IMG/VR virus record: IMGVR_UViG_3300045961_000282
Location: 142,258 to 206,257 of that record
Reading direction: 5' to 3' (one strand)
Length of the DNA stretch: 64,000 bases
The notes beneath the pieces were generated by a model that was not told the origin of the DNA, did not search any database, and saw only the letters and a program-made list of their open reading frames with translations. Shown in pieces: positions 7,331 to 60,012 of this stretch; the stretch's first letter is position 1, and each line of letters starts with the position of its first letter. The translations under genes were made by a program, and so were the position numbers.

Positions 7331-9175
7331 TTACCGCCTGCCCTTGTACGGAGAACGTTTTCCGAGGTTCGCTGCCCCTAGTGGCGGCAACCGATAGGCA
7401 GACATTGAGCGGGCACGCAGATTAGAATTGACGGCAAATGAAGCGCCCTTGACCTTGGTGGTGAGGGCCAGCGACGCCCAGACCATCGCGTCGAGACGTC
7501 CCGGAGATACCTTGGATTCCGCGGGGACCCATGAGGTGATCTCGGATTCCAACAGCGGGTGGTAGTTCAGCATATGCAGGCGGCCCTGCTCAGCAAGGGC
7601 CGCCACCGGCTCGGCGCGGGTTGCCTTGCCTGCTCGGGCGTGCACGATGTAGACCGGCACGTTGGCATTCACCTGTCCGATGGCCATGCGGACCAGTTCG
7701 CCGCCCTGATTCCCCTCGGCCACCACTGGGCCGCCCCACTTGATCGCCATGTCCACGACCCGCTTGGCCCAGACCGCCGGGCTGCCCAGCACGGTCGCAT
7801 CCTCCACGACGTAGAGTTGGCGGCGGTAGAAGTCCCGCTCGGCGGTTCCCTTCACCACCACGATGCCCGCCTCGTCCTTGGGGCGCTCAGCAACACTGGG
7901 ATCGACCCCGATCACCGTGTGCATCTTGATCCCGCCCGGCAGTTCGGTCACCCGTGCCGCATCGAGGTCGGACTGCATGAACAGCGCGCCCTCGATGTCG
8001 TGCAGCATCTCGCCCATCAGTTCCTGCTGGCCGATCCGGGTCCCTTCGTACAGGCCGAGGATCGTGGCGCGGAAGGACTGCGCAAGGTTGGCGAGGTTGT
8101 CATATGTCGTTCCACGGGTGATGACGATGCCGAACTCAGGATTCTCGGATTCCTCCAGCAGTTGGAACATCGAGGGAACGCGTCGCGGCGTGGTCGTGGC
8201 AACCATACGCGGCATGTCGCCATCAACCGGAAGTCGTAGACCCAGCCGCAAGTTGGCGAACGCCGTCAGACCATCGGCGCCGGAGACCTGCGGGTAGGAA
8301 GCAAACTCGTCGCAGTTGTGAATCAAGACTCCGGCGGCATAGAACTCCGGCGCTCCGTTGATCGTGAGGTCATAGACATTGGCTCGACCCGCCGGGCGCA
8401 CGGAAGCAACAGGAAACAGGGTGGTGCTCGAGTCTGTGCTGAGGCGGACGTGAACCATATCCCCGGCCTCGAGGTCGGCGGCCTGAACCCACGTGTCCCG
8501 CCTCGATTCGCTCGCCACCAACACGAGGTGATCGGGGGTGCAGCGCAATGTCGTCGGCCCGGCCTCGATCTCCACCACCTCGCGGTCGGTTCCCGTGCGC
8601 TGTGCGCGCGCGACCGGCCAGAAGCCGGAACGGGTGAGCACTTTCATCCCCGGCTGGATCTGTTCGATGGGCAGCGGCCCCAGCGAGGTGAGTACCGGCT
8701 CCCCTTCGGCTACGCACCACGCGGTGTCGAACTGGGGACCACGCAACTGGTCCGGCTCGTCGGCGGAGAAGGCCAATGCATACGCGCCGTTCGGCCACGA
8801 CACCCGGCGCTTGGATGGCTCCCAGACGGGTACCTCGCCGGGTCGGGAGGACTCGATGATCCCCGACGGGCCGTTGACCATGACATCGCGGACGTCAGCA
8901 GCGGTGCGGCCCAGCAGCGCGATTCGCCTGCCGTGGCCATCGCGGACCCGTTCATTGATCCACTCAGCGGCGGTTCTCGTTTTCCCCCAACCCCGCCCTG
9001 CCATCGCCAGCCAAAGCACCCAGTCTCCGGACGGAGGGGTCTGGGAGGGCCTCCTCCAGAAGGCCCAATCGTGTATCAGCGACTCGGCATCAACCCCTTC
9101 AAGGGTCGCCTCGCGCTCCTCAGGGGGAAGCAGGGCGATGCGTTGGGCCATCGAGAGTTCGTGGCCGTAGGTCAT
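7331..9175 (-). CDS. Terminase large subunit containing a mini-intein
   Basis: Walker A AGRGWGKT, LRGPQF..AW[intein]CDE Walker B, ATTTP, nuclease GVDPS and C-terminal SPGRLDA. Confidence 0.93.
   Translation of the reverse strand: MTYGHELSMAQRIALLPPEEREATLEGVDAESLIHDWAFWRRPSQTPPSGDWVLWLAMAGRGWGKTRTAAEWINERVRDGHGRRIALLGRTAADVRDVMVNGPSGIIESSRPGEVPVWEPSKRRVSWPNGAYALAFSADEPDQLRGPQFDTAWCVAEGEPVLTSLGPLPIEQIQPGMKVLTRSGFWPVARAQRTGTDREVVEIEAGPTTLRCTPDHLVLVASESRRDTWVQAADLEAGDMVHVRLSTDSSTTLFPVASVRPAGRANVYDLTINGAPEFYAAGVLIHNCDEFASYPQVSGADGLTAFANLRLGLRLPVDGDMPRMVATTTPRRVPSMFQLLEESENPEFGIVITRGTTYDNLANLAQSFRATILGLYEGTRIGQQELMGEMLHDIEGALFMQSDLDAARVTELPGGIKMHTVIGVDPSVAERPKDEAGIVVVKGTAERDFYRRQLYVVEDATVLGSPAVWAKRVVDMAIKWGGPVVAEGNQGGELVRMAIGQVNANVPVYIVHARAGKATRAEPVAALAEQGRLHMLNYHPLLESEITSWVPAESKVSPGRLDAMVWASLALTTKVKGASFAVNSNLRARSMSAYRLPPLGAANLGKRSPYKGRR
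8315..8716 (-). mobile_element. 134-aa mini-intein (Hint domain only) in the terminase Walker B motif
   Basis: Starts CVAEG, block B TPDH, block F VYDLTI, ends IHN followed by Cys+1; removal restores AW-CDE. Confidence 0.93.
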
Positions 9176-9247
9176 GGGGCGAACCATATCCCGCCGTCTC
9201 GGGTGTCAACCGCGGTTCATGCTCGATTCACGCGCGATGAATCCCGC

Positions 9248-29428: not shown

Positions 29429-29956
29429 ATGACCGAGAACACCACCACCACCCCCGCCGTCGCTGACGCCCTTGTCGCCGCGGCCACCGCCCCCACGACC
29501 CCCGTGGTCGTCCCCACCGCCCTGTCGCCCGAGGCGCAGGCGTACCTCGACGCGATCAACGCGCCGGGCGTGAACGTCCTGCACGTCGCGTGGGTGTCGC
29601 CCGAGAAGAAGGTCGCTGCCGCGTTCCGTGGGCACGTCCTGACCAAGGAGTCCACCGCGACGGTCATGACCGGCGTGGAGTACCAGAGCCTGTCGGTCAA
29701 CAACGACCGCGAAACGGGGGAACTCCCGTGGGGCGAGTGGGTGCCCGAGCACTACCCGTACCTGATCCAGCACAAGGGATCGTTCTACGCCCGGCTCTAC
29801 ACGGTGGACGGCACGATCCGCACCACCTACAAGATCGACGGGCGGATCGTGAAGCGCGAGGACTACCTCGCCATGCTGGTGCCCAGCGCCCGCGAGCCCA
29901 AGCGCCCGAACGGCGGGTGCATCACGGTTCACGTTGAGGGCTTGACCGTTTTGTAG
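29429..29956 (+). CDS. Hypothetical protein (LPWGEW motif)
   Basis: Own promoter, AGGAGG RBS. Confidence 0.8.
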   Translation: MTENTTTTPAVADALVAAATAPTTPVVVPTALSPEAQAYLDAINAPGVNVLHVAWVSPEKKVAAAFRGHVLTKESTATVMTGVEYQSLSVNNDRETGELPWGEWVPEHYPYLIQHKGSFYARLYTVDGTIRTTYKIDGRIVKREDYLAMLVPSAREPKRPNGGCITVHVEGLTVL

Positions 29957-30042
29957 CGGGATGGCACGGGGGGCCGATTGCCACGGCGTCGGCCCCCCGT
30001 GCTATGATTCACCCATCACCACCACCACGAAGGAGAATGACC

Positions 30043-31079: not shown

Positions 31080-31375
31080 GCCGCTCCATGCTGCTTGCCA
31101 TGCTGATCGGCGCGCTTCTGGCCGTCACGGTCTCCATCGTGCTGGTGCGCGTCCTCGCGTAACGCGCGCGCGACCGGCGGCCCTCGAGGGTCCCGAGGAT
31201 TTGGGGATCCCTAAACTCGACGAGTTCGAGGCTTCGTATGGTTCGCGCCGAGTTGTGTCATGCCCTCGATGCACACTGGTGGAACAACAGAACAGCGGGA
31301 CGGTCGATTGGACTTGCATCACCCCATCCCGTAAACTAGTTGCTACAACAACCACCACAACAGAAAGGCGCTGAC

Positions 31376-31663
31376 ATGAACGAGCCGACCATCACCGGAG
31401 TCATCTCCGAGGGCACCCTGCGCAACTCCGACCTGATCCCGGCGTTCGCCCGTGTGCTGGCCACACTGGACCCCAACCACCCGAGCGGGCCGGAGTTCGT
31501 GGTCCAGATCGAGAAGATCGCCCGCACGGCGGCGTGGGACTCCGAGGAGGCTGACTTCCTCCTCGCTGACCTGCAGGACGGAATCGCCGAGGCGATGCCC
31601 GAGGGCTGGCACTTCGGTACCCACGAGGGCGACGGGGCGTGCTTCGGGATCTTTCAGGACTGA
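31376..31663 (+). CDS. Small phage protein (SEGTLR..DL...FG.HEGDGACFG)
   Basis: Canonical leader. Confidence 0.8.
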   Translation: MNEPTITGVISEGTLRNSDLIPAFARVLATLDPNHPSGPEFVVQIEKIARTAAWDSEEADFLLADLQDGIAEAMPEGWHFGTHEGDGACFGIFQD

Positions 31664-31752
31664 TCCCCACCACAGCGGGCCGATCTGACAAGGGTCGGCC
31701 CGCTGTGGTATGCTTGATCCACAACAACCACCACTACCGAAAGGAATCACTC

Positions 31753-32443: not shown

Positions 32444-32776
32444 GTGATTCTTCCCGAGATCAACAAGAGGCGCCGCGGCCATCGGTTCTACCCGATCTGG
32501 ACCGACGAGGTGCCCGCCCTACGCAGCACCGAGGGTCAGGATGACCCGATGGTCCGCGCCCACTACTTCGTGGGCTCGTGGGACTGGTACGTCGTCGAGT
32601 GGGACCCCGAGACGGGCGAGGCGTTCGGCTTCGTCAAGGGCCTCGATGAGGAACTGGGCTACTTCTCGCTGGTCGAGATGGAGGCCACCCTCGCCCGCGG
32701 CCTGTTCCCCATCGAGCGTGACCTCTACTGGGACCCGGTGCCGCTGAGCACCATCACCCGAACGGTGCGTGCCTGA
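32444..32776 (+). CDS. DUF2958-family protein
   Basis: HYF..SWDWY..E......FG.V...ELGYFSL.E...IERDLY. Confidence 0.85.
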   Translation: MILPEINKRRRGHRFYPIWTDEVPALRSTEGQDDPMVRAHYFVGSWDWYVVEWDPETGEAFGFVKGLDEELGYFSLVEMEATLARGLFPIERDLYWDPVPLSTITRTVRA

Positions 32777-33001: not shown

Positions 33002-33156
33002 CAGCATCTCCTTCGTGTGTGCGTGCACACTACACGCGCGCGCGACCGGCTCGAGCCGCCGCCGGAGCCTCACCAGACCTCGATTGGGTGGGTGTCCTAG
33101 CGGCGTGCTATGCTTTGCAGGCAACAACCACCAACACAACCTGAAAGGAGAACAAC

Positions 33157-33348
33157 ATGACTCGACTTCCCGCAGGAGGAGAAACTCCCGCAGAGCGCAT
33201 CGCCGTCCTTGAGGAGTTCATGGCGCTGGAGGAGCAGATTGCTCCCGCCGCGGACCCTGCCGCTCGCATGGAGGCGCTGCTGCTACTCGATGCCATGTCC
33301 GGGGGACTACCCCGGCACCCCAATGCCGCTGGCCCCCTGAACGTCTGA
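33157..33348 (+). CDS. Hypothetical protein
   Basis: Canonical leader GAAAGGAG. Confidence 0.65.
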   Translation: MTRLPAGGETPAERIAVLEEFMALEEQIAPAADPAARMEALLLLDAMSGGLPRHPNAAGPLNV

Positions 33349-33446
33349 GAGCACGACGCAGCGGATTTGCAAGATTTCGCTGCGTCGTGCTAGTGTTATT
33401 CCATAACCACCTAGCAACACCACCACCACCTGAAAGGATCACCACC

Positions 33447-35969
33447 ATGACCACTGCTGCTGACCGCGCCAAGGCGCTCGCCGCGAAGTACGCCGCCACC
33501 ACGAGTGAGCGCCAGCATGACCAGAACTTCATCCGCGACTTCGTGGGCGTGTTCACCGACCGCGACCCCGCGGACATCTTCCGGTTCCAGTACCCCGTCG
33601 AGACCCCGCGCGGCACGACTGGCGCGATCGACGCCCTGTGGGAGAGCCACATCCTGTTCGAGATGAAGTCGGCGGGCAAGGACCTGCACGCAACCCTCAA
33701 GGATCAGGTGCGCCCCTACGTCGCCCATCTGGCCCCGGCGAAGCACCCGCAGATGTACATCATCAGCGACTTCCAGAACTTCCTCGTCGTGGACCCCGAC
33801 GGCACCAAGCACGAGTTCCCACTGGCGGACCTGCACGCCCACGTGTCCCTGTTCACCCCGATCTTCGACGGCCTCCCGGCCTACCTGCGCAGCCACGGCA
33901 CCGTGAACGAGCAGGCGGCATCGCTGCTGAGCGCGGTCCTCAAGGGCCTGCGGAAGAACGGCTACTCCGAGACGGACCTGCCCGCGCTGGCCACCCGGTT
34001 GCTGTTCGCCCTGTACGCCGACGACAACTACGTCTGGAAGAACGGCACGTTCCACGGCGACGTGCTGGGCACCCCGGCTGACGGGGCCACCCTTGGCCGT
34101 GTGATCGACGGCATCTTCCGACTGCTCGACAGCCCGAACGCCGACGCAACAGACTACTGCTACATCAACGGCAGCATGTTCGCCGGGGACATCGCGGTGC
34201 CCGTGTTCGACGCGGATACCCGTGAGGCGCTGCTGGAGGCCTGCGAGTACGACTGGCGCGGCTTGGACCCGATGATCTTCGGGACGATCTACCAGTCAGC
34301 GATGGACGCCGACGAGCGCCACGCGGAGGGCGCGCACTACACCCACGAGCAGGACATCCTCGACGTGCTGGGTCCGGCGTTCCTCGACAACCTGAAGGCG
34401 CAGTATGCCGCCGCACAGGGGAGCGCGACCAAGTTGCGCAACTTCCTCAAGCGCCTGTCGGAGATCGAGGTCCTCGACCCGTCGTGTGGATCGGGCAACT
34501 TCCTCATGGTGGCCTACCGCGAGTTGCGCGCGCTGGAGACCGCCGCGTCGCTCGACCTCGCGGCGGGCGGCGCCAAGACGATCCCGGCGCAGCGCGTGTC
34601 ACTGGCGCAGTTCCACGGCATCGAGTACAACGCCCTGTCGGCATCGGTGGCCCGCACGAGCCTGTGGCTCACGCTGCACGCCGCCGATCAGCGGCACACC
34701 GAGGCAATGGGCGAGTTGATGTGGGACACGTTCCCGCTCAAGGACGTGGCCGACATCCGGCACGCGAACGCGGTCACGACCGACTGGAACGCCGAGTTCC
34801 CGAACCTGACGGCCATCGTCGGCAACCCGCCGTACATCAGCGCGAAGAAGGAGCGCGACGGCGGACAGAATGCCCAGCAGGTCGCGGAACGCAAGGCGCT
34901 GGGCATCAAGGGCGGGATGATGGACTACGCCCACATCTGGATGGTCAAGTCTGCGCAGTACATCGCCGAGTTCCCCGATACCCGGTCAGGTCTCGTGGTG
35001 ACGGATTCCGTCGCACAGGGCACGCAGGCATCGGGCCTGTGGTCACACCCGGCCATGCAGGACGTGTACCCGATCTTCGGGCGGCAGTCCTACGTCTGGC
35101 CCGGCGATGCATCGGTGCGCGTGGTGAACTACGGCCTTGGCTCCAAGCCTGAGGCAGTCGAGTTGCGCGCCGAGGATCGCAGCATGATCCCGGCTGCCTA
35201 CCTGACCCCCTACCTCACGCCGACCGACATCCCCTCGCGGGCCACGGCCAACGTGTCGCGCACGGCCCCGGCGTGGATGGTGAACCTGAAGAACGGTACT
35301 TCGTATGCCGACTTCGGCCACTACGCCAAGTTGGGCGACGACCTCGCGGTCATCCAGCGCGACCATCCCGAGATGCTGGTGAACAAGGTGTCATCCTCGA
35401 ACCTGCTGTCAGGCAAGGATGATCCGGTGCTGTGGTTCGGAAACCGAACCTCGAAGGCTGTGGCTCACAAGGCCATCGCGCCACGGCGCGAGGCTGTGCG
35501 GATCAAGCGTGGCGCCGGGCACCCGAAGGGACCGGAGTGGGTTCCGTCGTCCGTGGTCACCGGGACGTTCATGGTGGTGCCCGCGACGTTCAGCAAGAGT
35601 TACGAGCGCACGCCCGTCGTGATCCTGTCGGGCACGAACTACATGACCCAGAAGGTCTACTACGCCCCGGTGGATTGGTTCATGGCCGGGCTGGTCATGT
35701 CCAAGCGCGCGATGGACGCCCAGATCGCAGGCGGCAGCAAGATGGGCAAGGGCGGCGACGTTCAGTACGGCACCGGCTACCTGTACGGGATGCCTGCCCC
35801 GACCAACGACACCCCCGAGTTGCGGGCCAAGATCGCGGCCAAGGCACAGGAGTGCATCGCCGCCCGGCCCGGCCCGGCAGCCGAGTGCATGAAGGTCACC
35901 AACATGCCCGAGTCGCTGGCGAAGTTGCACCGCGAGTTGGACGCGCTGGTCGATGAGTGGTGGGGCTGA
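33447..35969 (+). CDS. MmeI-like type IIL restriction-modification enzyme (REase-MTase-TRD fusion)
   Basis: IDALW...FEMKS (PD-ExK), RLLF..ADD, GAHYT, LDPSCGSGNFL (motif I), VGNPPY (motif IV). Confidence 0.9.
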   Translation: MTTAADRAKALAAKYAATTSERQHDQNFIRDFVGVFTDRDPADIFRFQYPVETPRGTTGAIDALWESHILFEMKSAGKDLHATLKDQVRPYVAHLAPAKHPQMYIISDFQNFLVVDPDGTKHEFPLADLHAHVSLFTPIFDGLPAYLRSHGTVNEQAASLLSAVLKGLRKNGYSETDLPALATRLLFALYADDNYVWKNGTFHGDVLGTPADGATLGRVIDGIFRLLDSPNADATDYCYINGSMFAGDIAVPVFDADTREALLEACEYDWRGLDPMIFGTIYQSAMDADERHAEGAHYTHEQDILDVLGPAFLDNLKAQYAAAQGSATKLRNFLKRLSEIEVLDPSCGSGNFLMVAYRELRALETAASLDLAAGGAKTIPAQRVSLAQFHGIEYNALSASVARTSLWLTLHAADQRHTEAMGELMWDTFPLKDVADIRHANAVTTDWNAEFPNLTAIVGNPPYISAKKERDGGQNAQQVAERKALGIKGGMMDYAHIWMVKSAQYIAEFPDTRSGLVVTDSVAQGTQASGLWSHPAMQDVYPIFGRQSYVWPGDASVRVVNYGLGSKPEAVELRAEDRSMIPAAYLTPYLTPTDIPSRATANVSRTAPAWMVNLKNGTSYADFGHYAKLGDDLAVIQRDHPEMLVNKVSSSNLLSGKDDPVLWFGNRTSKAVAHKAIAPRREAVRIKRGAGHPKGPEWVPSSVVTGTFMVVPATFSKSYERTPVVILSGTNYMTQKVYYAPVDWFMAGLVMSKRAMDAQIAGGSKMGKGGDVQYGTGYLYGMPAPTNDTPELRAKIAAKAQECIAARPGPAAECMKVTNMPESLAKLHRELDALVDEWWG

Positions 35970-36240
35970 CCTACCCCACGCCCCCGAAACCCCCCGGTTC
36001 CCCTGTGGAGCCGGGGGGTTTTGCGTGCTCGCCTCACGCGTACGCGCGCGCGACCGGCAACCCTCGAGCGTTGATCGAGACTCCTCGAGACTCCTCCGGG
36101 AGGCCGTATGGTTCGCCGCCGGTGTTTGTGTCAGACCCCTGCCGCACACTGCCTGCACCAAACAGGATTTGGCGCAGGCAGGAAACTGCTGCTATGCTTG
36201 ACCCACAACAGCACGACCACCACTACCGAAAGGACACACC

Positions 36241-36636: not shown

Positions 36637-36720
36637 TCCCACCACGGAGGGCCGATTCGACAAGGGTCGGCTCCCCGTGGTAAGGTTCTACCAACACCAC
36701 AACGACGAAAGGACACCGAC

Positions 36721-37861: not shown

Positions 37862-37933
37862 ATCCGAGAGCGCAGGTTGAGCCGGACGGTCTCCAAAACC
37901 GTCTTCGTGAGAGTTCGAATCTCTCCTCGGGTG
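37862..37933 (+). tRNA. tRNA-Trp(CCA), CCA end not encoded
   Basis: Acceptor ATCCGAG/CTCGGGT, anticodon arm ACGGT-CTCCAAA-ACCGT, T arm GAGAG-TTCGAAT-CTCTC; atypical D arm; TTGACA/TATGCT promoter upstream. Confidence 0.85.
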
Positions 37934-37942
37934 CTGGCGCGA

Positions 37943-38884: not shown

Positions 38885-39100
38885 TCCCCCGAACAAGAAC
38901 CCCCGGCGTGCCCCTCGCGTCGGGGGTTCTTCGTGTGTACGCGCGCGCGACCGGCGGCTCGAGGTGAGGCTATGACTTTCTCGAGCCTCCTCCGGTGGGC
39001 CGTATGGTTCGCCCCGTTCCCTCGATTTGTTACGTTCCGAATCCACGTGCTATGCTTGGGGCAACACCGCACCACCACCACTACGACGAAAGGACTTCTC

Positions 39101-42627: not shown

Positions 42628-43020
42628 ATGCAAGCACGACTCATCGACCACGACGTTCGCGCCCTCGCCGAGTTCGAGGGGGTGCGCGTCGAGACGGTGC
42701 GTACCTCGCGCGGCTACGACAACGGGTTCGAGGTTGATCGCGTCGAGGTGCACGCCTTCTGGTGCGCAGCCAACCCGCAGTGGGACGAGCCCGAGGGCTG
42801 GTCCGTTCGGGTCAACGTCAAGGGCTGGCCCCTGACGGCCAAGGGAACCCGCGACAAGCGGGTCAGCGATCGCACGCTCGTCCACGACGTGCCCTCGTGG
42901 CCCGAGGTCGTCCACGAGGCCGCCCGCGCTGCCTACGATCTGGCGCTGAGCCGGGGCATCGCGTGGCGGGAGGTCCTCGGCGACGACGGCCAGCCCGGCA
43001 CCACCCTGACCCTGCTCTGA
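42628..43020 (+). CDS. Hypothetical protein
   Basis: Canonical leader. Confidence 0.75.
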   Translation: MQARLIDHDVRALAEFEGVRVETVRTSRGYDNGFEVDRVEVHAFWCAANPQWDEPEGWSVRVNVKGWPLTAKGTRDKRVSDRTLVHDVPSWPEVVHEAARAAYDLALSRGIAWREVLGDDGQPGTTLTLL

Positions 43021-43129
43021 CAGCGCAGGGGGCGGATTCGACACGGGTCCGCTCCCTGTGCTAGGCTTCTACCAACACAACCACCACCTCTGCTAGAAAA
43101 ACTGGCAGACCCAAGAAAGGAGCAAGATC

Positions 43130-45152: not shown

Positions 45153-45294
45153 ATATCCCGAAACGTCCGCGCCTCGCGCGGAGCGCGCTTGTGGTGGGCG
45201 CGCGAAGGCCCCGAGCCGGGTTGAGTTTTCCTTTCCTCCCCGGCCTCGGGGCCTTCCCATGTCTCACGCGCCTACGCGCGCGCGACCGGTGTAG

Positions 45295-45366
45295 AGGCGG
45301 AAAAGAGAGTCGAACTCTTGTATGCAGATTTGCAGTCTGCCGCCTGTGCCGCTCGGCCATTCCGCC
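45295..45366 (-). tRNA. tRNA-Cys(GCA), CCA end not encoded
   Basis: Acceptor GGCGGAA/TTCCGCC with U73, anticodon arm GCAGA-CTGCAAA-TCTGC, T arm AAGAG-TTCGACT-CTCTT. Confidence 0.93.
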
Positions 45367-46801: not shown

Positions 46802-46904
46802 GCACGAACCAAACGGATTTGACCCGTGTCAGAGCGGGATGCTATGCTTCTGGCACAACGAACAACCGAACACAATGACCACCACTACGGAAAGGATCAC
46901 CACC

Positions 46905-47861
46905 ATGCCCACCACCACCCCCACCACCCCCGGCGCGCAGACCGTTGCCGATGCCCTGTCCCGCTTCACGGCGGGCACCATGACCCCCCCGGCTGCTGCG
47001 GCTGCCGCGACCCCCACGACCCCCCCGGTCGCCACTGGCTCGCGCATCTCGTTCCCCCGCCCGAACGGCGAGGCGTACTACCCGCGCATCGTGGACGGCT
47101 CCACGCACGACGTGGCGCTGCTGCGCTCGGCGCGCGGCTCGGTGCTGACCGACAACCTGTACGTCCTGCTCTACGGCGAGCCGGGCACGGGCAAGACGGC
47201 TGCCTTTGAGGCGGCGTTCCCCGATGGCCTCACGCTGTCCGGTGACGGCGACACGACCACCGACGACTTCGTGGGGTCGTGGGTCCAGAACCCTGACGGC
47301 ACCTACGAGTGGGTCGACGGCCCGCTCATCATCGCGATGGAGAACGGCCTGCCGTTCCTCATTGACGAGGTTGCCCTGATCGACACGAAGGTCATGGCCC
47401 TCGTCTACTCCGCGATGGACGGGCGCGGCGAGATTCGCATCAAGGCCAACCCGGCGCGCGGCATCATCAAGGCGCAGCCCGGCTTCTACGTCGTCGGTGC
47501 CTGCAACCCGAACGCCCCCGGCGCTCGCATGTCCGAGGCGCTCACGTCGCGGTTCAGCCTGCACATCGAAGCCACCACGGACTACGACCTTGCCAAGGCA
47601 ATCGGCGTCCCGGCCAAGGCGATCACGGTCGCGAAGAACCTCGACTCCAAGCGGTCGTCGGGCGAGGTCGCGTGGGCGCCCCAGATGCGCGAGTTGCTCG
47701 CCTTCAAGCGCACGTCCGAGCGGTTCAGCGTCGGCATGGCCGTGGCGAACCTGATCGGCATTGCCCCCGAGGACGACCGGGCAATCGTGGCCGACGTGGT
47801 GAGCCGTGCCTTCGGCGCGGCAGTCGCTAACCTGCGGCAGGGCGCAGCGGCCACGGCCTGA
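46905..47861 (+). CDS. MoxR/CbbQ-type AAA+ ATPase
   Basis: GEPGTGKT, WVDGPL..AM..G..FLIDE, ACNP, SEALTSRF, MRELL. Confidence 0.92.
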   Translation: MPTTTPTTPGAQTVADALSRFTAGTMTPPAAAAAATPTTPPVATGSRISFPRPNGEAYYPRIVDGSTHDVALLRSARGSVLTDNLYVLLYGEPGTGKTAAFEAAFPDGLTLSGDGDTTTDDFVGSWVQNPDGTYEWVDGPLIIAMENGLPFLIDEVALIDTKVMALVYSAMDGRGEIRIKANPARGIIKAQPGFYVVGACNPNAPGARMSEALTSRFSLHIEATTDYDLAKAIGVPAKAITVAKNLDSKRSSGEVAWAPQMRELLAFKRTSERFSVGMAVANLIGIAPEDDRAIVADVVSRAFGAAVANLRQGAAATA

Positions 47862-48803: not shown

Positions 48804-50648
48804 ATGACCTACAACCCCCGCAACCTCGCCTCATGGTGGGCGTCGATGCAGAAGGCCGATGCCCGCGAGTGGGTTCGCGTGTCGGCTGAGACTGGCGACT
48901 TCCTGCGCACCCTGTCGGGCCGCGAGGACCTGCTCGCCGTGGTCGAGCCGGGCATCTGTGCCGACAAGGGCGCGCCCGCCGTCTACCTGCCCGAGAAGGC
49001 CCACGTCGAGGTCAACCCCGACAAGTGCGCCACTGGGATCGCCCCCGCCGATATCTCCATGACCACTGAGGTCGCTCGGCTGCGGCACCCCGCCCTGACC
49101 GGCGCGTCGGTGCATGAGGGCGCTCACGCGATGGTGTCCCAGTGGGAACTCGACCAGACCCCCGCGCGCCGCCGCGTGGTGCAGGCTGCCCTGCTGTTGG
49201 AGGAATCCCGCGCCGAGAAGCACATGGTCGAGTCCAACCCCGAGACTCGGGTGTTCCTGCGGGCCGCGTTCACCGATCTGGTCAACGCTTCGGGCGAGAT
49301 GCCCGAGGACGTGCACGGCGCGGCGCACCTTGCCGCCCTGTCGCTGGGCCGGGCCGACGCAGGCGTGCTCGACCACGCCGAGGTCGCAGACCTTCGGGCC
49401 GACCTTGTGGCCATTCTGGGCGAGGACCTGCTCGACTCCCTGCGGGCCGTGTGGCTCGACGCGCACGCCCTGCGTGACCACCGCGACAAGGAGGCGATGG
49501 AGGCGCTGGGCCAGCGCTGGATCGACCTGCTGCCCGAGCCTGAGGCCGAGAGCGCCGAGGGCGGGATCACCGTGATCGTCTGCGGAATGCCTTCCTCCGG
49601 TGGCTCTGGCGGCGGCGAGGGTTCCGAGGACGAGTCCGAGGGCTCTGGCTCTGGCGACTCCGAGGGTTCCGAGGGGTCCGAGGGCAAGGGGTCCGGTTCG
49701 CTGGGCCGCTTGGCCGAGGCCGTGGCCGCTGCCGCCGAGGCCGAGGCTGAGGCGCAGGTGGACGGGGCCAAGGTCCGCGACGAGGCCGAGCGCCGCGCCG
49801 TGGCTGCCAAGTCCGACCGCGAGGCGTCCAAGGCCGCTGAGAAGGTGTTCAGCGACGAGATTGGCCACGGCCACGGCTACGGCTACGGGGAGGGCGTCAA
49901 GGGGTCCGAGGCTCCGTCTGTCAAGGTTCGCGCGACGGCCAACCGGCTCGCCCGCGCGATCCAGAAGGCGCAGTTCCGCGACCGCTCCAAGACCGTGCTC
50001 TCTGCGTCCGTCCCGCCCGGTCGGCTCAAGTCGTCGGCGGCAGTGAGGCGCAGCGCGCAGCAGTCGCAGGGCATCCCCGTCACGGCTGAGCCGTGGCGCC
50101 AGACCGTGCGCAAGCACGTCGATCAGCCCCCGGTGACGGTCGGCATCATGGTCGATATCAGCGGGTCGATGCGCTGGGCCGAGCAGCCCGTCGCGGAACT
50201 CGCGTGGTCCATCGCCCACGCCGTGAACCGGAACGAGGGCACCACGGCGACGGTGGCCTACGGCGAGCGCGTGCACGCCGTGACCAAGCCGGGCGAGTCC
50301 CCGAAGGCGATGCGCACGTTCGATGCGTCGGGCGGCACCGAGGAAGTCGCCGGGGCGCTCAAGGCCCTCGACGGCGGGCTGCACCTGACCAACGGGCGCG
50401 GCGTGCGGATGCTGGTCAACGTCAGCGACGGCCAGTACACGCACTCGCAGCGCGAGAAGGCAACGGCGATCCTGCGGCGCATGACGGCCAACGGCGTCAA
50501 GGTGCTCTGGATCGACGCTGACGGCGGCGGCTGGGCGGGGACCACCCCCATCACGATGCCCGGCGTGACGACCGTCAAGGTCAAGCGCGGGGCCGATCTG
50601 GCCGACGTGCTCGCCCCCGCGATCACCAAGGCGCTGTCCGAGGCGTGA
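48804..50648 (+). CDS. VWA-domain protein with N-terminal HExxH metallopeptidase-like domain (MoxR partner)
   Basis: HEGAH...LLEESR, G/S/E-rich linker, MIDAS VDISGSM, GGT, VSDG. Confidence 0.88.
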   Translation: MTYNPRNLASWWASMQKADAREWVRVSAETGDFLRTLSGREDLLAVVEPGICADKGAPAVYLPEKAHVEVNPDKCATGIAPADISMTTEVARLRHPALTGASVHEGAHAMVSQWELDQTPARRRVVQAALLLEESRAEKHMVESNPETRVFLRAAFTDLVNASGEMPEDVHGAAHLAALSLGRADAGVLDHAEVADLRADLVAILGEDLLDSLRAVWLDAHALRDHRDKEAMEALGQRWIDLLPEPEAESAEGGITVIVCGMPSSGGSGGGEGSEDESEGSGSGDSEGSEGSEGKGSGSLGRLAEAVAAAAEAEAEAQVDGAKVRDEAERRAVAAKSDREASKAAEKVFSDEIGHGHGYGYGEGVKGSEAPSVKVRATANRLARAIQKAQFRDRSKTVLSASVPPGRLKSSAAVRRSAQQSQGIPVTAEPWRQTVRKHVDQPPVTVGIMVDISGSMRWAEQPVAELAWSIAHAVNRNEGTTATVAYGERVHAVTKPGESPKAMRTFDASGGTEEVAGALKALDGGLHLTNGRGVRMLVNVSDGQYTHSQREKATAILRRMTANGVKVLWIDADGGGWAGTTPITMPGVTTVKVKRGADLADVLAPAITKALSEA

Positions 50649-50732
50649 CCCGCACGGGGGCCGGATTCGACAAGAGTCCGGCCCCCGTGCTAACCTTCTA
50701 CTACCACCAACACCAACGAAGGGAGAACCACC

Positions 50733-58032: not shown

Positions 58033-60012
58033 ATGACCATCTACCCAGACCCCCCAGTGTGGTGGTCCGACGCGGAGAGTCTCGTCGCCGCGTCGGACCC
58101 CTCATTCGCCTCCCGCGCCCCGCAGGCCGAGGCCGCCCGGCTGATCGGTGAGGCCTTCACGACGAAGACGCACGCCGCCATCGACGCGCCCGTCGGGCTC
58201 GGAAAGTCGATGGCCTGCCTCGTTGCCGCGGAGAACGCCAAGGGCCGGACCGTGATCTCCACGGCCACCCGTGCCCTGCAGGAGCAGTTGCGCAGCATCG
58301 ACATCCCGGCGCTGCAGGACGCGGGCGTGCTGACCCGCAGCGTCGTCGTGCTCGATGGCCGCAGCCGGTGGGCCTGCCAAGCCCGCGCCGTCCATGAGTT
58401 GGACCGGATCAGCAAGCCCGGGCAGAAGGTCATCCGTGAGGTGCTCAAGCACCTGCGGGCCAACCCGGAGGAGGCCCGACGGGAAGACATCCCGGTGGCC
58501 ATCCCGGACTGGGTATGGTCACGGATCTGCTCGGACACCGACGCCTGTGGCGTGTTGGGCTGCAAGGACGGCGGCACCGCATGTGCGTACACCCGCCAGC
58601 GCAACGCCGCCCGCGCGGCGGACATCGTCATCGTCAACCACCACGTGCTGCTGGCCGACGCGGCGATCAAGGCGGGGGACCCCGTGTCGTGGGGCCTGCG
58701 CCCGGCGGAAGAGGACGACCGGCCGCGCGCGGGTGTGCTGGGCGCGTTCGCCAACCTCATCATCGACGAGGCCCACGCACTGGAGTCCGCCTGTGAGTCC
58801 TTCGGCGAGCACCGGGTGACCATCCGAGGAATCCAAGCACTGGCCACCCGAGTCTCGCGGTTGGAGATGTCCGGGGCAGCGACGCGGAGTCTCGGTGAGT
58901 GCCTCGACGAACTGCGGATCGGCATGATGGGCCTGCCGCAGAACTGCCTGATCATGCCCGCCGGGGACACGAAGCCGATCTTCGCCCAAGCCGCCGAGGC
59001 CGCCAAGCGCGCCGGGGAGCAACTGCGCCACAGCGGAGCGGCGTCCTTCGAGAGCAACGTCAGCGTGGAGATCGTGGTCAAGGCCTGCTTCTCACTGGCC
59101 CGCAAGTTGGAGGCCATCGACGAGGCGGTGCGCACCGGCAAGGACGAGTTCGGCCCGCGGGCGCCGTCCGCCGACGACACGGGGATCATCTCCCAGTTGG
59201 TCGACGCCTCCGGGTGGTTGCAGCGCAACCTGTTCTCCTGCGTCACCACCGTCGCGATGAGCGGGACGCTGGCCGTGCCGAGCAACCGGGACTGGGTGAC
59301 CCACCGGATCGGACTGTCGGCGCCGGTCGCCATGCTGCCCACCGTCTTCGACCTCGAGAACCAGCGGCTGGTGTACGTCACCCCGCGGGTCGAGGTCCCC
59401 GCGGCGGCCTCGGCGCGCAGCACCGACGCGGATGTCGCCGAGATCAAGGACCTCATCGACGCCTCCTCCGGGCGGGCGCTCGTATTGTTCCCGGCGATGA
59501 CCGACCTGAAGTACGTCCACGAGCGGCTGAAGATCGAGCACACCCTGCTGGCGCAGGGGATCACGATGGACCCGCACGCCGACACCAAGTCCGGCGACCC
59601 GGTGCGGATGAGCAACGCCGAACTGGCCCGCCGGTTCCGTGAAGACACCTCCTCCGTGCTGCTGGCGACGCGGAGTTTCTTCGAGGGGGTCGACTTCCCC
59701 GGCGACACCTGCTCGATGGTGATCGTCGTTCGGTTCCCCAACCTGCGACCCGATGAGCCGCTGACCCTCGCGCGACGCAAGCACATCGAGGCCAAGGGCG
59801 GCAACGCATGGCGGGACTATCAGGAGCCCGCCATGCAGTTGGTGTTCCGACAGGCCTGTGGCCGCGCCATCCGACGCACCACCGACCGCGGCGTGGTGGC
59901 CGTGCTGGACCCCCGCTGCAAGACCAAGGGCTATGCCGTCACCGCACTGCGGGCACTGCAGCCCTCCGACTTCACCCACGACATGGATCGGGTGCGGGCT
60001 TTCCTGTCCTGA
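58033..60012 (+). CDS. dinG: DinG/YoaA-family Fe-S ATP-dependent helicase
   Basis: Q motif RAPQ, APVGLGKS, TRALQEQL, Cys cluster, IIDEAH, SGT, FEGVDFPG, QACGRAIR. Confidence 0.92.
   Translation: MTIYPDPPVWWSDAESLVAASDPSFASRAPQAEAARLIGEAFTTKTHAAIDAPVGLGKSMACLVAAENAKGRTVISTATRALQEQLRSIDIPALQDAGVLTRSVVVLDGRSRWACQARAVHELDRISKPGQKVIREVLKHLRANPEEARREDIPVAIPDWVWSRICSDTDACGVLGCKDGGTACAYTRQRNAARAADIVIVNHHVLLADAAIKAGDPVSWGLRPAEEDDRPRAGVLGAFANLIIDEAHALESACESFGEHRVTIRGIQALATRVSRLEMSGAATRSLGECLDELRIGMMGLPQNCLIMPAGDTKPIFAQAAEAAKRAGEQLRHSGAASFESNVSVEIVVKACFSLARKLEAIDEAVRTGKDEFGPRAPSADDTGIISQLVDASGWLQRNLFSCVTTVAMSGTLAVPSNRDWVTHRIGLSAPVAMLPTVFDLENQRLVYVTPRVEVPAAASARSTDADVAEIKDLIDASSGRALVLFPAMTDLKYVHERLKIEHTLLAQGITMDPHADTKSGDPVRMSNAELARRFREDTSSVLLATRSFFEGVDFPGDTCSMVIVVRFPNLRPDEPLTLARRKHIEAKGGNAWRDYQEPAMQLVFRQACGRAIRRTTDRGVVAVLDPRCKTKGYAVTALRALQPSDFTHDMDRVRAFLS

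What the first reader, a model, noticed from the sequence alone, without database searches (positions are those of the whole stretch)
33350..35969. Phage-encoded, apparently complete MmeI-like restriction-modification enzyme wired as an early cassette
Seen: PD-ExK nuclease motif retained, MTase motifs intact, divergent TRD, native hairpin promoter, canonical leader and phage-like codon usage, so it looks assimilated. Phages usually carry orphan MTases. An active type IIL enzyme could attack host or competitor DNA, or mimic host methylation (inference).
Basis: partly seen in the sequence, partly recalled or inferred. Interest (0 to 1): 0.6.

Follow-up and report, generated by a model that had tools for sequence, protein, structure and literature searches.

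The report
Phage-borne intact MmeI-type restriction-modification enzyme
A 206-kb virus of a probable actinobacterial host carries a complete, selectively maintained single-protein "cut-and-methylate" enzyme of the MmeI family as a stand-alone gene with the phage's own promoter, leader and terminator; this is a real but not unprecedented case of a phage owning a weapon normally used by bacteria against phages.

Summary
Window 33447-35969 (+) encodes an 840-aa protein. The GTG at 33387 is only the ORF's first possible start. It matches MmeI end to end (Pfam MmeI_N/hel/Mtase; PDB 5HR4 E 2.5e-78; PADLOC type IIG model E 2.4e-136; AF2 model pLDDT 87, Foldseek top hit MmeI). The nuclease triad D62/E72/K74, motif I and NPPY are all present. 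The TRD is divergent (19% identity to canonical enzymes; the Pfam TRD model misses it). It still shows the residue pairings published for base recognition in this family, which predicts ..CAG at positions 4-6. The C-terminal bundle is about 40 aa shorter than usual. The gene has a sigma70-like promoter wrapped in a hairpin, a design found at six other genes, plus a CA-rich leader, a GAAAGGA ribosome site, its own terminator and phage-typical codon usage. It belongs to a rare six-member clade found only on phage-like metagenome contigs. Within the clade the nuclease domain is as constrained as the MTase domain. However, at least 63 IMG/VR viral contigs already carry MmeI-family genes with the triad intact, so this is a new member of a known kind. 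Activity, recognition site, early timing and biological role remain inferences.

The parts
33350..33391 (+). Hairpin starting 2 nt after the stop codon of the upstream 63-aa ORF (33157-33348). Arms are 33350-33363 and 33378-33391, with a 14-nt loop. It probably ends or stabilises the upstream transcript, and it encloses the promoter's -35 element.
   Evidence: RNA fold -32.1 kcal/mol, z -5.56, 0 of 200 shuffles as good. Sequence read directly. Same design at six other promoters.
33367..33396 (+). Sigma70/sigmaA-type promoter: -35 TTGCAA (33367-33372), 18-nt spacer, extended -10 TGC-TAGTGT (33388-33396).
   Evidence: Matches the phage's own recurring promoter consensus GATTTGAC-N18-TGCTATGCT, found about 25 times, mostly on the + strand. 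Not called by the generic scan.
33403..33446 (+). Predicted CA-rich 5' leader with ribosome-binding site GAAAGGA at 33432-33438. The transcription start near 33403 is inferred from the -10 position.
   Evidence: Leader repeat families D1-D7 are shared with neighbouring genes. Sequence read directly.
33447..35969 (+). Coding sequence of the MmeI-family type IIL (IIG) restriction-modification enzyme, 840 aa (P0002), stop codon included.
   Evidence: Pfam MmeI_N 7.9e-19, MmeI_hel 2.2e-7, MmeI_Mtase 1.4e-52. PDB 5HR4 MmeI E 2.5e-78. PADLOC REase_MTase_IIG E 2.4e-136, covering residues 2-839. AF2 pLDDT 87.4; Foldseek top hit 5HR4, E 2.5e-49, TM 0.75.
33447..33896 (+). N-terminal PD-(D/E)XK endonuclease domain (residues 1-150). 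Catalytic codons: D62 33630-33632, E72 33660-33662, K74 33666-33668.
   Evidence: Aligned with MmeI D70/E80/K82. Invariant in 36 sequences. dN/dS 0.35 against the closest homologue, similar to the MTase domain.
34347..35126 (+). [quoted passage not shown] Motif I is at 34476-34502 and NPPY at 34824-34835.
   Evidence: Pfam MmeI_Mtase, Eco57I and N6_Mtase hits. Invariant D344, P345, G348, G350, N351, F352 and N460, P461, P462.
35127..35792 (+). Divergent target-recognition domain (residues 561-782), ending in MPAP in place of the family's FPFP motif. Residues at the published specificity positions: A713 and Q735 (position 3), K736 and Q773 (position 4), a G/K..D771 pair with a 2-aa insertion (position 6).
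   Evidence: Alignment and mapping. Recognition rules from PMC2731914. 19% identity to canonical TRDs. No Pfam TRD hit for this protein, but hits for clade members P0005 and P0007.
35793..35966 (+). Shortened C-terminal helical region (residues 783-840). It ends in EWWG, where canonical enzymes continue for about 35-45 more residues.
   Evidence: Alignment tails. The PADLOC profile is matched only to position 885 of 912. MmeI's C-terminal bundle spans residues 826-919 (PMC4833311).
35986..36022 (+). Intrinsic-terminator-like hairpin with a T run at 36019-36022, 17 nt after the stop codon.
   Evidence: Terminator scan hit at 35999-36018 plus TTTT. Fold -41.2 kcal/mol, z -4.9.

Best explanation
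The gene encodes a catalytically competent, single-polypeptide type IIL restriction-modification enzyme of the MmeI family. It is carried as an autonomous one-gene cassette by a large, apparently non-integrating actinobacteriophage.

Shown:
- The full five-domain architecture is present, with the nuclease triad and the SAM and NPPY motifs intact.
- Its TRD follows the family's known recognition rules.
- The nuclease and methylase domains are under equal purifying selection.
- The gene has the phage's own promoter, leader, terminator and codon usage.

Inferred mechanism:
- The host RNA polymerase transcribes the gene from the TTGCAA-N18-TGCTAGTGT promoter soon after infection.
- The enzyme binds an asymmetric 6-7 bp site. 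The family code predicts C-A-G at positions 4-6.
- It methylates the adenine on one strand, so phage DNA is marked as self.
- When two or more unmodified sites are bound, it cuts about 20 bp downstream.
- Unmethylated DNA in the cell is therefore cut. That means the host chromosome and/or co-infecting phages, so the enzyme works as a weapon in conflict between genomes rather than as an orphan methylase.
For: Family membership over the full length:
- Pfam MmeI_N, MmeI_hel and MmeI_Mtase.
- PDB 5HR4 MmeI, E 2.5e-78.
- PADLOC type IIG model, E 2.4e-136, residues 2-839.
- AF2 model pLDDT 87.4; Foldseek top hit 5HR4, E 2.5e-49, TM 0.75 over 743 columns.

Catalytic residues:
- D62, E72 and K74 are invariant in 36 aligned sequences, as are the motif I residues D344, P345, G348, G350, N351, F352 and N460-P461-P462 of motif IV; position 463 is Y in the clade and F in canonical enzymes.

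Selection:
- Within the six-member clade the nuclease domain is 54% identical and the MTase domain 61%.
- dN/dS against the closest homologue is 0.35 for the nuclease and 0.40 for the MTase domain.

Functional TRD. Across the six clade members the residues at the published specificity positions fall into the published combinations (rules from PMC2731914):
- K736 with Q773 in three members, G736 with R773 in the other three.
- A713 with Q735 in two members, R713 with D/E735 in the other four.
- D771 in three members, N771 in the other three.

Phage ownership:
- Hairpin promoter, leader and terminator.
- Codon fit better than the median gene.

Stand-alone gene:
- No methylase, helicase or BREX partner hit in the ten flanking genes scanned (Pfam; PHROGs; PADLOC; no single library saw all ten).
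- No conserved neighbour in the relatives' contigs.

Conflict context:
- The homologue in L004 follows an Ltp-type superinfection-exclusion gene (3.6e-28).
- The homologue in L003 follows a weak 'immunity to superinfection' hit.

Lifestyle:
- No tyrosine or serine recombinase was found in the 99%-complete record.
Against: - No activity, methylation or expression data exist. The only run found to hold the sequence is a DNA run that may be its own source.
- The C-terminal helical bundle is about 35-45 aa shorter than in every characterised family member, and the FPFP motif reads MPAP. The effect on cleavage is unknown.
- The -10 element (TAGTGT) departs from the phage consensus, so expression may be weak.
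- No asymmetric hexamer is strongly depleted in the genome. The best candidate fitting the prediction is CTACAG (19 observed, 45 expected, z -5.7). It ranks third of 1994 words in a distribution with sd 1.74. So the genome does not corroborate the predicted site.
- MmeI-type enzymes turn over poorly and need two sites, which limits their use for bulk degradation of host DNA (established knowledge; PMC4833311).
- 'Lytic' rests only on the absence of two recombinase families.
Confidence: 0.6

Rival explanations
1. In practice it works as a methylase only. The enzyme mainly methylates phage DNA to protect it from a host MmeI-like, BREX-like or other system that reads m6A at the same site. Its nuclease would be silent, attenuated or held in check.
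For: - Phage methylases are usually protective (established knowledge).
- The shortened C-terminal bundle and the changed FPFP motif could impair assembly of a cleavage complex.
- The deviant -10 suggests low expression.
- The phage clearly faces host restriction. CCWGG (5 observed, 645 expected), GCCGGC (2 vs 302) and AGTACT (4 vs 47) are almost eliminated from the genome.
Against: - The D/E/K triad is invariant across the clade.
- The nuclease domain is as constrained as the methylase domain.
- Family members that lost nuclease function (the YeeA/DnmA group) also lost the motif and sit beside a helicase (PMC2731913). Neither is true here.
- No close host homologue shares the TRD. The best bacterial hit is 31% identical, and the clade motifs are absent from 185,579 species genomes.
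Confidence: 0.2
2. It is a selfish passenger (a moron or addiction-type element). The cassette persists and moves between phage early regions because losing it exposes newly made, unmethylated DNA to residual enzyme. It would bring no net benefit to the phage.
For: - The neighbours of the five homologues are not homologous to this phage's genes, so the gene sits in variable regions of different genomes.
- It is a self-contained unit with its own promoter and terminator.
- R-M systems are known to behave selfishly (established knowledge).
Against: - Codon usage is fully ameliorated and the gene uses the phage's own promoter and leader style, which argues for long residence.
- The clade has diverged to 51% identity while staying intact, with specificity changes at the code positions. 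That pattern is typical of function under diversifying pressure.
- Post-segregational killing has little meaning in a phage without a stable carrier state.
Confidence: 0.12
3. It is not a phage gene. It would be a host or other bacterial fragment joined to the phage contig by misassembly, or part of a BREX, MADS or type ISP system.
For: There are weak hits to PglX/BrxX, MAD2 and DrmMI models. The record comes from a metagenome.
Against: - Those hits are far below cut-off: 25 bits against 400 for PglX, and 11.5 against 720 for MAD2.
- The gene is embedded 33 kb inside the window, between genes that share the same promoter, leader and hairpin design.
- GC3 and codon usage match the neighbours.
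- No partner genes of those systems lie nearby.
Confidence: 0.03

Closest known systems
MmeI (Methylophilus methylotrophus), type IIL/IIG R-M enzyme, PDB 5HR4, and its characterised family (NmeAIII, PspPRI, PlaDI and others; Morgan et al. 2009, PMC2731913 and PMC2731914; Callahan et al. 2016, PMC4833311)
   Same: - Same domain order: PD-(D/E)XK nuclease, helical spacer, gamma-class m6A methylase, TRD, C-terminal helices.
- Same D-x9-E-x-K triad, motif I and NPP(Y/F).
- No separate methylase next door.
- TRD residues at the positions equivalent to MmeI 751/773, 774/810 and 806/808 pair up as in the published code.
   Different: - Only 25-31% identical overall, and 19% in the TRD.
- 840 aa against 915-940 aa.
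- C-terminal bundle about 35-45 aa shorter.
- FPFP motif reads MPAP.
- The Pfam TRD and C models do not hit.
- Encoded in a 206-kb phage rather than a bacterial chromosome.
- Activity, site and cleavage distance are untested.
MmeI-family genes on other viral contigs (69 IMG/VR contigs; Leptospira phage LE1; Ralstonia phage YO199)
   Same: They are viral or proviral carriers of a full-length family member. 63 of the 69 keep the D/E/K triad, and 68 of the 69 keep the motif I residues and NPP(F/Y).
   Different: - All are 35% identical or less to this protein and belong to the canonical long form.
- Many sit on 30-60 kb contigs from isolate genomes, which are likely prophages where R-M defends the lysogen.
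- None belongs to the six-member short clade.
Single-subunit restriction system of the cluster N mycobacteriophage Panchino (prophage-mediated defence; cited in PMC7542560)
   Same: It is an actinobacteriophage-encoded single-polypeptide restriction enzyme used against competing phages, located in a variable region of the genome.
   Different: - It is expressed from a prophage in lysogens. The present phage shows no integrase.
- Panchino was not among the tblastn hits of this protein in the phage collection, so it is not a detectable homologue.
YeeA/DnmA group (Bacillus subtilis), MmeI-like methylases without a nuclease
   Same: Homologous spacer, methylase and TRD; one-strand m6A at an asymmetric site (PMC2731913; PMC9973331).
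   Different: That group lacks the PD-ExK motif, shows no endonuclease activity and is flanked by the YeeB helicase and YeeC. Here the motif is intact and the scanned flanking genes gave no helicase hit.
BREX PglX/BrxX methyltransferases
   Same: Related methylase-TRD core with an asymmetric 6-bp m6A site. Foldseek hits 9EWZ and 8Q56 at about E 1e-12.
   Different: Scores are far below the family cut-offs (25 bits against 400). PglX has no nuclease domain and needs the BrxC and PglZ partners, none of which was detected among the flanking genes.

Membership tests
MmeI family (type IIL R-M enzymes; criteria of Morgan et al. 2009, PMC2731913) | N-terminal PD-(D/E)XK motif aligned with MmeI D70, E80 and K82 | tested here: met
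   D62, E72 and K74 align with the MmeI triad in the phmmer alignment to 5HR4. They are invariant in the 36-sequence alignment. Pfam MmeI_N E 7.9e-19.
MmeI family (type IIL R-M enzymes) | Similarity along the entire length of MmeI, not only the methylase core | tested here: met
   The PADLOC IIG profile is matched over residues 2-839, profile positions 6-885 of 912, E 2.4e-136. Foldseek aligns 743 columns to 5HR4 with TM 0.75. In alignment A1 conserved columns run to residue 835. Sequence-only phmmer stops at residue 604.
MmeI family (type IIL R-M enzymes) | Gamma-class N6-adenine methylase motifs (motif I FxGxG-like; motif IV NPPF/Y) | tested here: met
   DPSCGSGNF at residues 344-352 and NPPY at 460-463. 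Pfam MmeI_Mtase 1.4e-52, Eco57I 6.4e-6, N6_Mtase 1e-5.
MmeI family (type IIL R-M enzymes) | Homologous TRD that uses the family's residue pairs for base recognition and ends in the FPFP motif | tested here: inconclusive
   The Pfam MmeI_TRD model does not hit this protein, though it hits clade members P0005 and P0007. The fold and the alignment support homology. The code positions pair up as published: K/Q against G/R, A/Q against R/D-E, and D against N. The FPFP motif is MPAP, with only the two prolines kept.
MmeI family (type IIL R-M enzymes) | C-terminal conserved helical bundle (MmeI residues 826-919) | tested here: inconclusive
   The first helices are present and conserved (L824, H828, L831, D832, V835 are nearly invariant). 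The protein ends at EWWG and lacks the last 35-45 residues found in all 30 canonical sequences. Pfam MmeI_C does not hit.
MmeI family (type IIL R-M enzymes) | No second DNA methyltransferase gene beside it (one-strand modification is enough) | tested here: met
   Flanking genes between 30004 and 39409 gave no methylase hit in Pfam, PHROGs or PADLOC. The only other methylase found is about 31 kb away around the presumed circular map (about 174 kb on the linear record), at genome 526-1653.
MmeI family (type IIL R-M enzymes) | Cleavage about 20/18 nt 3' of an asymmetric 6-7 bp site; m6A on one strand only; SAM-dependent | not testable with these tools
   This needs purified protein or methylome data. 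The only run found is a DNA run that may be the source itself.
BREX PglX/BrxX | Score above the NCBIfam cut-off and presence of BREX partner genes (BrxC, PglZ) | tested here: not met
   Best score is 25.1 bits against a cut-off of 400. No partner families among the flanking genes.
YeeA/DnmA-type nuclease-less MmeI homologues | PD-ExK motif absent and a YeeB-like helicase gene adjacent | tested here: not met
   The motif is present. The scanned flanking genes gave no helicase hit; the only helicase identified in the window is at 58033-60012, 22 kb away.

The most novel reading that the evidence does not exclude
A phage-restricted, shortened lineage of MmeI-type enzymes has evolved as an offensive weapon of large lytic actinobacteriophages. 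The enzyme would be transcribed by the host polymerase at the start of infection. It would mark the phage's own DNA on one strand and cut the host chromosome and rival phages. Its specificity would diversify between phages through the same few TRD residue pairs that bacteria use. The hairpin-wrapped promoter would couple termination of the upstream gene to controlled, low-level expression of a dangerous enzyme.
Probability: 0.3. Interest if true: 0.6.

Novelty: new member of a known kind. Interest (0 to 1): 0.42.

Why it matters
- If active, the enzyme would probably add a new recognition specificity to a family valued for being programmable. The six-member clade offers natural swaps at the known code positions in a shorter scaffold.
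- Complete R-M enzymes in apparently lytic phages are little studied. This one would allow a direct test of whether such phages use restriction offensively, against host DNA or competing phages, rather than only for protection by methylation.
- The hairpin-embedded promoters are a compact terminator-promoter design that may interest people working on actinobacteriophage transcription.
- It does not change current understanding. Viral carriage of intact MmeI-family genes is already visible in public collections.

Tried and rejected
- Nucleotide searches of the gene and of a 5-kb neighbouring block against 50,697 phage records gave nothing. The phage has no close sequenced relative at DNA level, so no annotated counterpart could be used.
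- PHROGs has no family for this protein beyond marginal hits near 1e-5.
- Site depletion and strand bias gave no convincing signal. No asymmetric 6- or 7-mer is depleted to anything like the degree of the palindromes CCWGG and GCCGGC. The best word fitting the predicted NNNCAG is CTACAG (19 observed, 45 expected). Getting such a word among the top three by chance has a probability of about 0.1. I treat it as a weak lead, not evidence.
- A conserved partner gene was ruled out. Neighbours on the five homologous contigs have no homologues beside the gene here.
- Searches for more clade members found none. I scanned species genomes, IMG/VR and JGI metagenomes with clade-specific peptide patterns. 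These scans depend on the patterns used and can miss divergent members.
- The search for expression evidence returned one DNA run and no RNA run.
- The large representative protein search was not run.
- N4-type single-stranded hairpin promoters were considered for the 'hairpin promoter' and set aside. The element has canonical -35 and extended -10 boxes with 18-nt spacing, which points to the host holoenzyme.
- No complex prediction was attempted. No binding claim is made.
Full report
**Where the window lies**

The window is the last 64 kb of a 206,257-bp IMG/VR virus record rated 99% complete. GC content is about 65%.

- It is a phage. A large terminase subunit lies at 7331-9187 (-), a DNA helicase at 58033-60012 and an ATPase at 46839-47861.
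- The terminase is closest to that of Actinomycetia phage DSL-LC01 (52%) and to those of Microbacterium phages of about 192 kb (about 42%). An actinobacterial host is therefore likely. This is an inference.
- Two sequence features fit such a host: extended -10 promoters of the form TGnTAnnnT, and several leaderless genes.
- No tyrosine or serine recombinase was found, so a lytic lifestyle is plausible but unproven.
- The only public run holding the sequence is a freshwater-sediment DNA metagenome that may be its own source.

**The observation**

The ORF at 33387-35969 (+) is real.
- The GTG at 33387 is only the first possible start. The ATG at 33447 follows a GAAAGGA site (33432-33438). It gives an 840-aa product, which matches the gene called in the source record and the lengths of the homologues.
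- Pfam finds MmeI_N (7.9e-19), MmeI_hel (2.2e-7) and MmeI_Mtase (1.4e-52), but not MmeI_TRD or MmeI_C.
- The solved MmeI structure 5HR4 matches at E 2.5e-78 over residues 35-604 of the 860-aa frame. In that alignment MmeI's D70/E80/K82 pair with D-x9-E-x-K of this protein.
- PADLOC's type IIG model covers residues 2-839 at E 2.4e-136.
- An AlphaFold2 model built on a 36-sequence alignment has pLDDT 87.4 and pTM 0.71. Its best PDB match is MmeI (E 2.5e-49, TM 0.75, 743 columns). DrdV, BpuSI, CamA and BrxX follow far behind.
- In the alignment, D62, E72 and K74 are invariant. So are the motif I residues D344, P345, G348, G350, N351 and F352, and N460-P461-P462 of motif IV.

**How it differs from canonical enzymes**

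- The word search found five close relatives: 72, 62, 60, 53 and 51% identical, 836-850 aa long, all on short metagenome contigs. Identity then drops to 31% for the usual 915-940-aa family.
- The six-member clade ends at EWWG, so it lacks the last 35-45 residues of the C-terminal bundle. It reads MPAP where the family has FPFP. For comparison, the MmeI domain limits are in PMC4833311.
- By domain, identity to canonical enzymes is 32-36%, except in the TRD, where it is 19%. 'Divergent TRD' is accurate.

**Is the TRD functional?**

Morgan and Luyten identified residue pairs that set positions 3, 4 and 6 of the recognition site (PMC2731914). I mapped those positions through a Kingella homologue that carries NmeAIII numbering. 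The equivalents in this protein are:

| Site position | MmeI residues | This protein |
|---|---|---|
| 3 | E751 / N773 | A713 / Q735 |
| 4 | A774 / R810 | K736 / Q773 |
| 6 | E806 / R808 | G or K, after a 2-aa insertion / D771 |

Across the six clade members these positions vary in the published combinations, while the residues around them stay fixed:
- K736 with Q773 in three members, and G736 with R773 in the other three.
- A713 with Q735 in two members, and R713 with D/E735 in the other four.
- D771 in three members, and N771 in the other three.

By the published rules, K plus Q or S means C at position 4, and an aspartate at the 808 position means G (or R) at position 6. The methylated A is position 5. 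My inferred prediction for this enzyme is therefore NN?CAG, with position 3 unresolved.

**Is the nuclease decaying?**

No.
- Within the clade the nuclease domain is 54% identical and the methylase domain 61%.
- Against the closest homologue (L076), dN/dS is 0.35 for the nuclease and 0.40 for the methylase.
- The family's known nuclease-less branch (YeeA/DnmA) lacks the motif and sits beside a helicase (PMC2731913). Neither applies here.

**The cassette**

- A 14-bp-arm hairpin (33350-33391; -32.1 kcal/mol, z -5.6) begins 2 nt after the stop codon of the upstream 63-aa ORF.
- Its loop carries TTGCAA (33367-33372). Its 3' arm runs into the extended -10, TGC-TAGTGT (33388-33396), with an 18-nt spacer.
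- This matches the phage's own promoter consensus, GATTTGAC-N18-TGCTATGCT, seen about 25 times, mostly on the + strand between window positions 3.4 and 51.5 kb.
- Six other promoters share the hairpin design, with the TG of the extended -10 at 30000, 31706, 36190, 36678, 43059 and 50688. Five of them start just after an upstream stop codon; no upstream gene end was identified for the one at 36190.
- The arms differ in sequence between copies but keep their pairing.
- The simplest reading is a compact terminator-promoter module read by the host polymerase, not an N4-type single-strand promoter.
- A CA-rich leader with GAAAGGA is shared with the neighbours.
- A terminator-like hairpin with a T run follows the stop codon at 35986-36022.
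- GC3 is 0.90, and synonymous codon choice fits the phage better than the median gene does.
- The flanking genes are small and mostly unknown. One is a DUF2958 protein at 32444-32776. None is a methylase, helicase or BREX component.
- 'Early' is a reasonable inference from the host-type promoter and the array of small genes. No expression data exist.

**How unusual is it?**

- An alignment-based scan of IMG/VR found 69 viral contigs with MmeI-family genes. 63 of them keep the D/E/K triad. Some are large, at 117, 125, 168 and 497 kb.
- GenBank phages LE1 (Leptospira) and YO199 (Ralstonia) carry distant homologues.
[quoted passage not shown] It is not a detectable homologue.
- The short clade itself is rare. 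Its signature peptides were not found in 185,579 species genomes, IMG/VR or JGI metagenomes.
- The five relatives sit among unrelated small genes. In L004 the homologue follows an Ltp-type superinfection-exclusion gene (3.6e-28). In L003 it follows a weak 'immunity to superinfection' hit. This hints at a role in competition between phages.

**Genome tests for the site**

- The genome almost eliminates CCWGG (5 observed, 645 expected), GCCGGC (2 vs 302) and AGTACT (4 vs 47). So it is exposed to restriction and responds by avoiding sites.
- No asymmetric hexamer is treated that way. Among NNNCAG words the lowest is CTACAG (19 vs 45, z -5.7). It ranks third of 1994 asymmetric words in a distribution with sd 1.74.
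- This is compatible with self-methylation removing any need for avoidance. It neither confirms the predicted site nor shows activity.

**Verdict**

This is a real, intact and well-assimilated MmeI-family gene in a large phage. It belongs to a rare short subclade that follows the family's recognition code. I rate it a new member of a known kind and moderately interesting. Activity, recognition site, timing and biological role remain to be tested.

Noticed in passing
window 29956-30008, 31657-31714, 33350-33396, 36144-36198, 36645-36686, 43013-43067, 50643-50696: Seven sigma70-like promoters are each wrapped in a strong hairpin (-21 to -34 kcal/mol). Six of the hairpins start just after the upstream stop codon (none identified for 36144-36198); each holds the -35 in its loop and ends at the TG of the extended -10. 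The arms differ between copies but keep their pairing. This looks like a compact terminator-promoter module.
   Followed up: partly
window-wide; e.g. 36048-36058, 33040-33050, 31168-31178, 38945-38955; also 36084-36117 and 38980-39013: GCGCGACCGGC occurs 21 times exactly, and 35 times with up to one mismatch, against 9.6 expected. Some copies abut an extended -10 and a leaderless ATG (19601, 14630). About 48 nt downstream of two copies lies a 34-nt repeat (91% identical) containing CCGTATGGTTCGCC. This may be a second promoter class or a regulator site. Unexplained.
   Followed up: partly
whole 206-kb genome (G000): The palindromes CCWGG (5 observed, 645 expected), GCCGGC (2 vs 302) and AGTACT (4 vs 47) are almost eliminated. 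CGGCCG and CTCGAG are partly depleted. This points to host type II restriction systems with those sites. AACCATA/TATGGTT is over-represented (85 vs 27), which reflects the -10 box.
   Followed up: partly
G000:C1:526-1653 (-), loci L005/L006 (outside the window): The phage carries a second DNA methyltransferase of the N6_N4_Mtase family (PF01555, E 6.5e-15) in a 479-aa open frame at the far end of the record. No C5-methylase was found.
   Followed up: no
window 3863, 4404, 19614, 19864 (+); 10222, 14628 (-): Several genes appear leaderless, with an ATG 6-8 nt after the -10 box. This fits an actinobacterial host.
   Followed up: no
window 37862-37934 (+) and 45294-45366 (-): Two tRNA genes, tRNA-Trp (CCA) and tRNA-Cys (GCA), lie within the array of small genes.
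   Followed up: no
L004:582-866 (+); L003:1182-1679 (+): On two contigs carrying close homologues, the gene just upstream is an Ltp-type superinfection-exclusion lipoprotein (phrog_4980, 3.6e-28) or weakly resembles an 'immunity to superinfection' protein (5.6e-5). This suggests these enzymes sit in competition or defence regions of phages.
   Followed up: partly
window 32444-32776 (+): A DUF2958 protein (E 1.6e-6) is encoded two genes upstream of the enzyme. Its function is unknown.
   Followed up: no
L076:2563-2677: On the contig of the closest homologue (72% identity), the sequence downstream of the gene looks by eye like the 3' end of a tRNA gene on the opposite strand (GGATTCGAACCC). No tRNA scan was run on it.
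   Followed up: no
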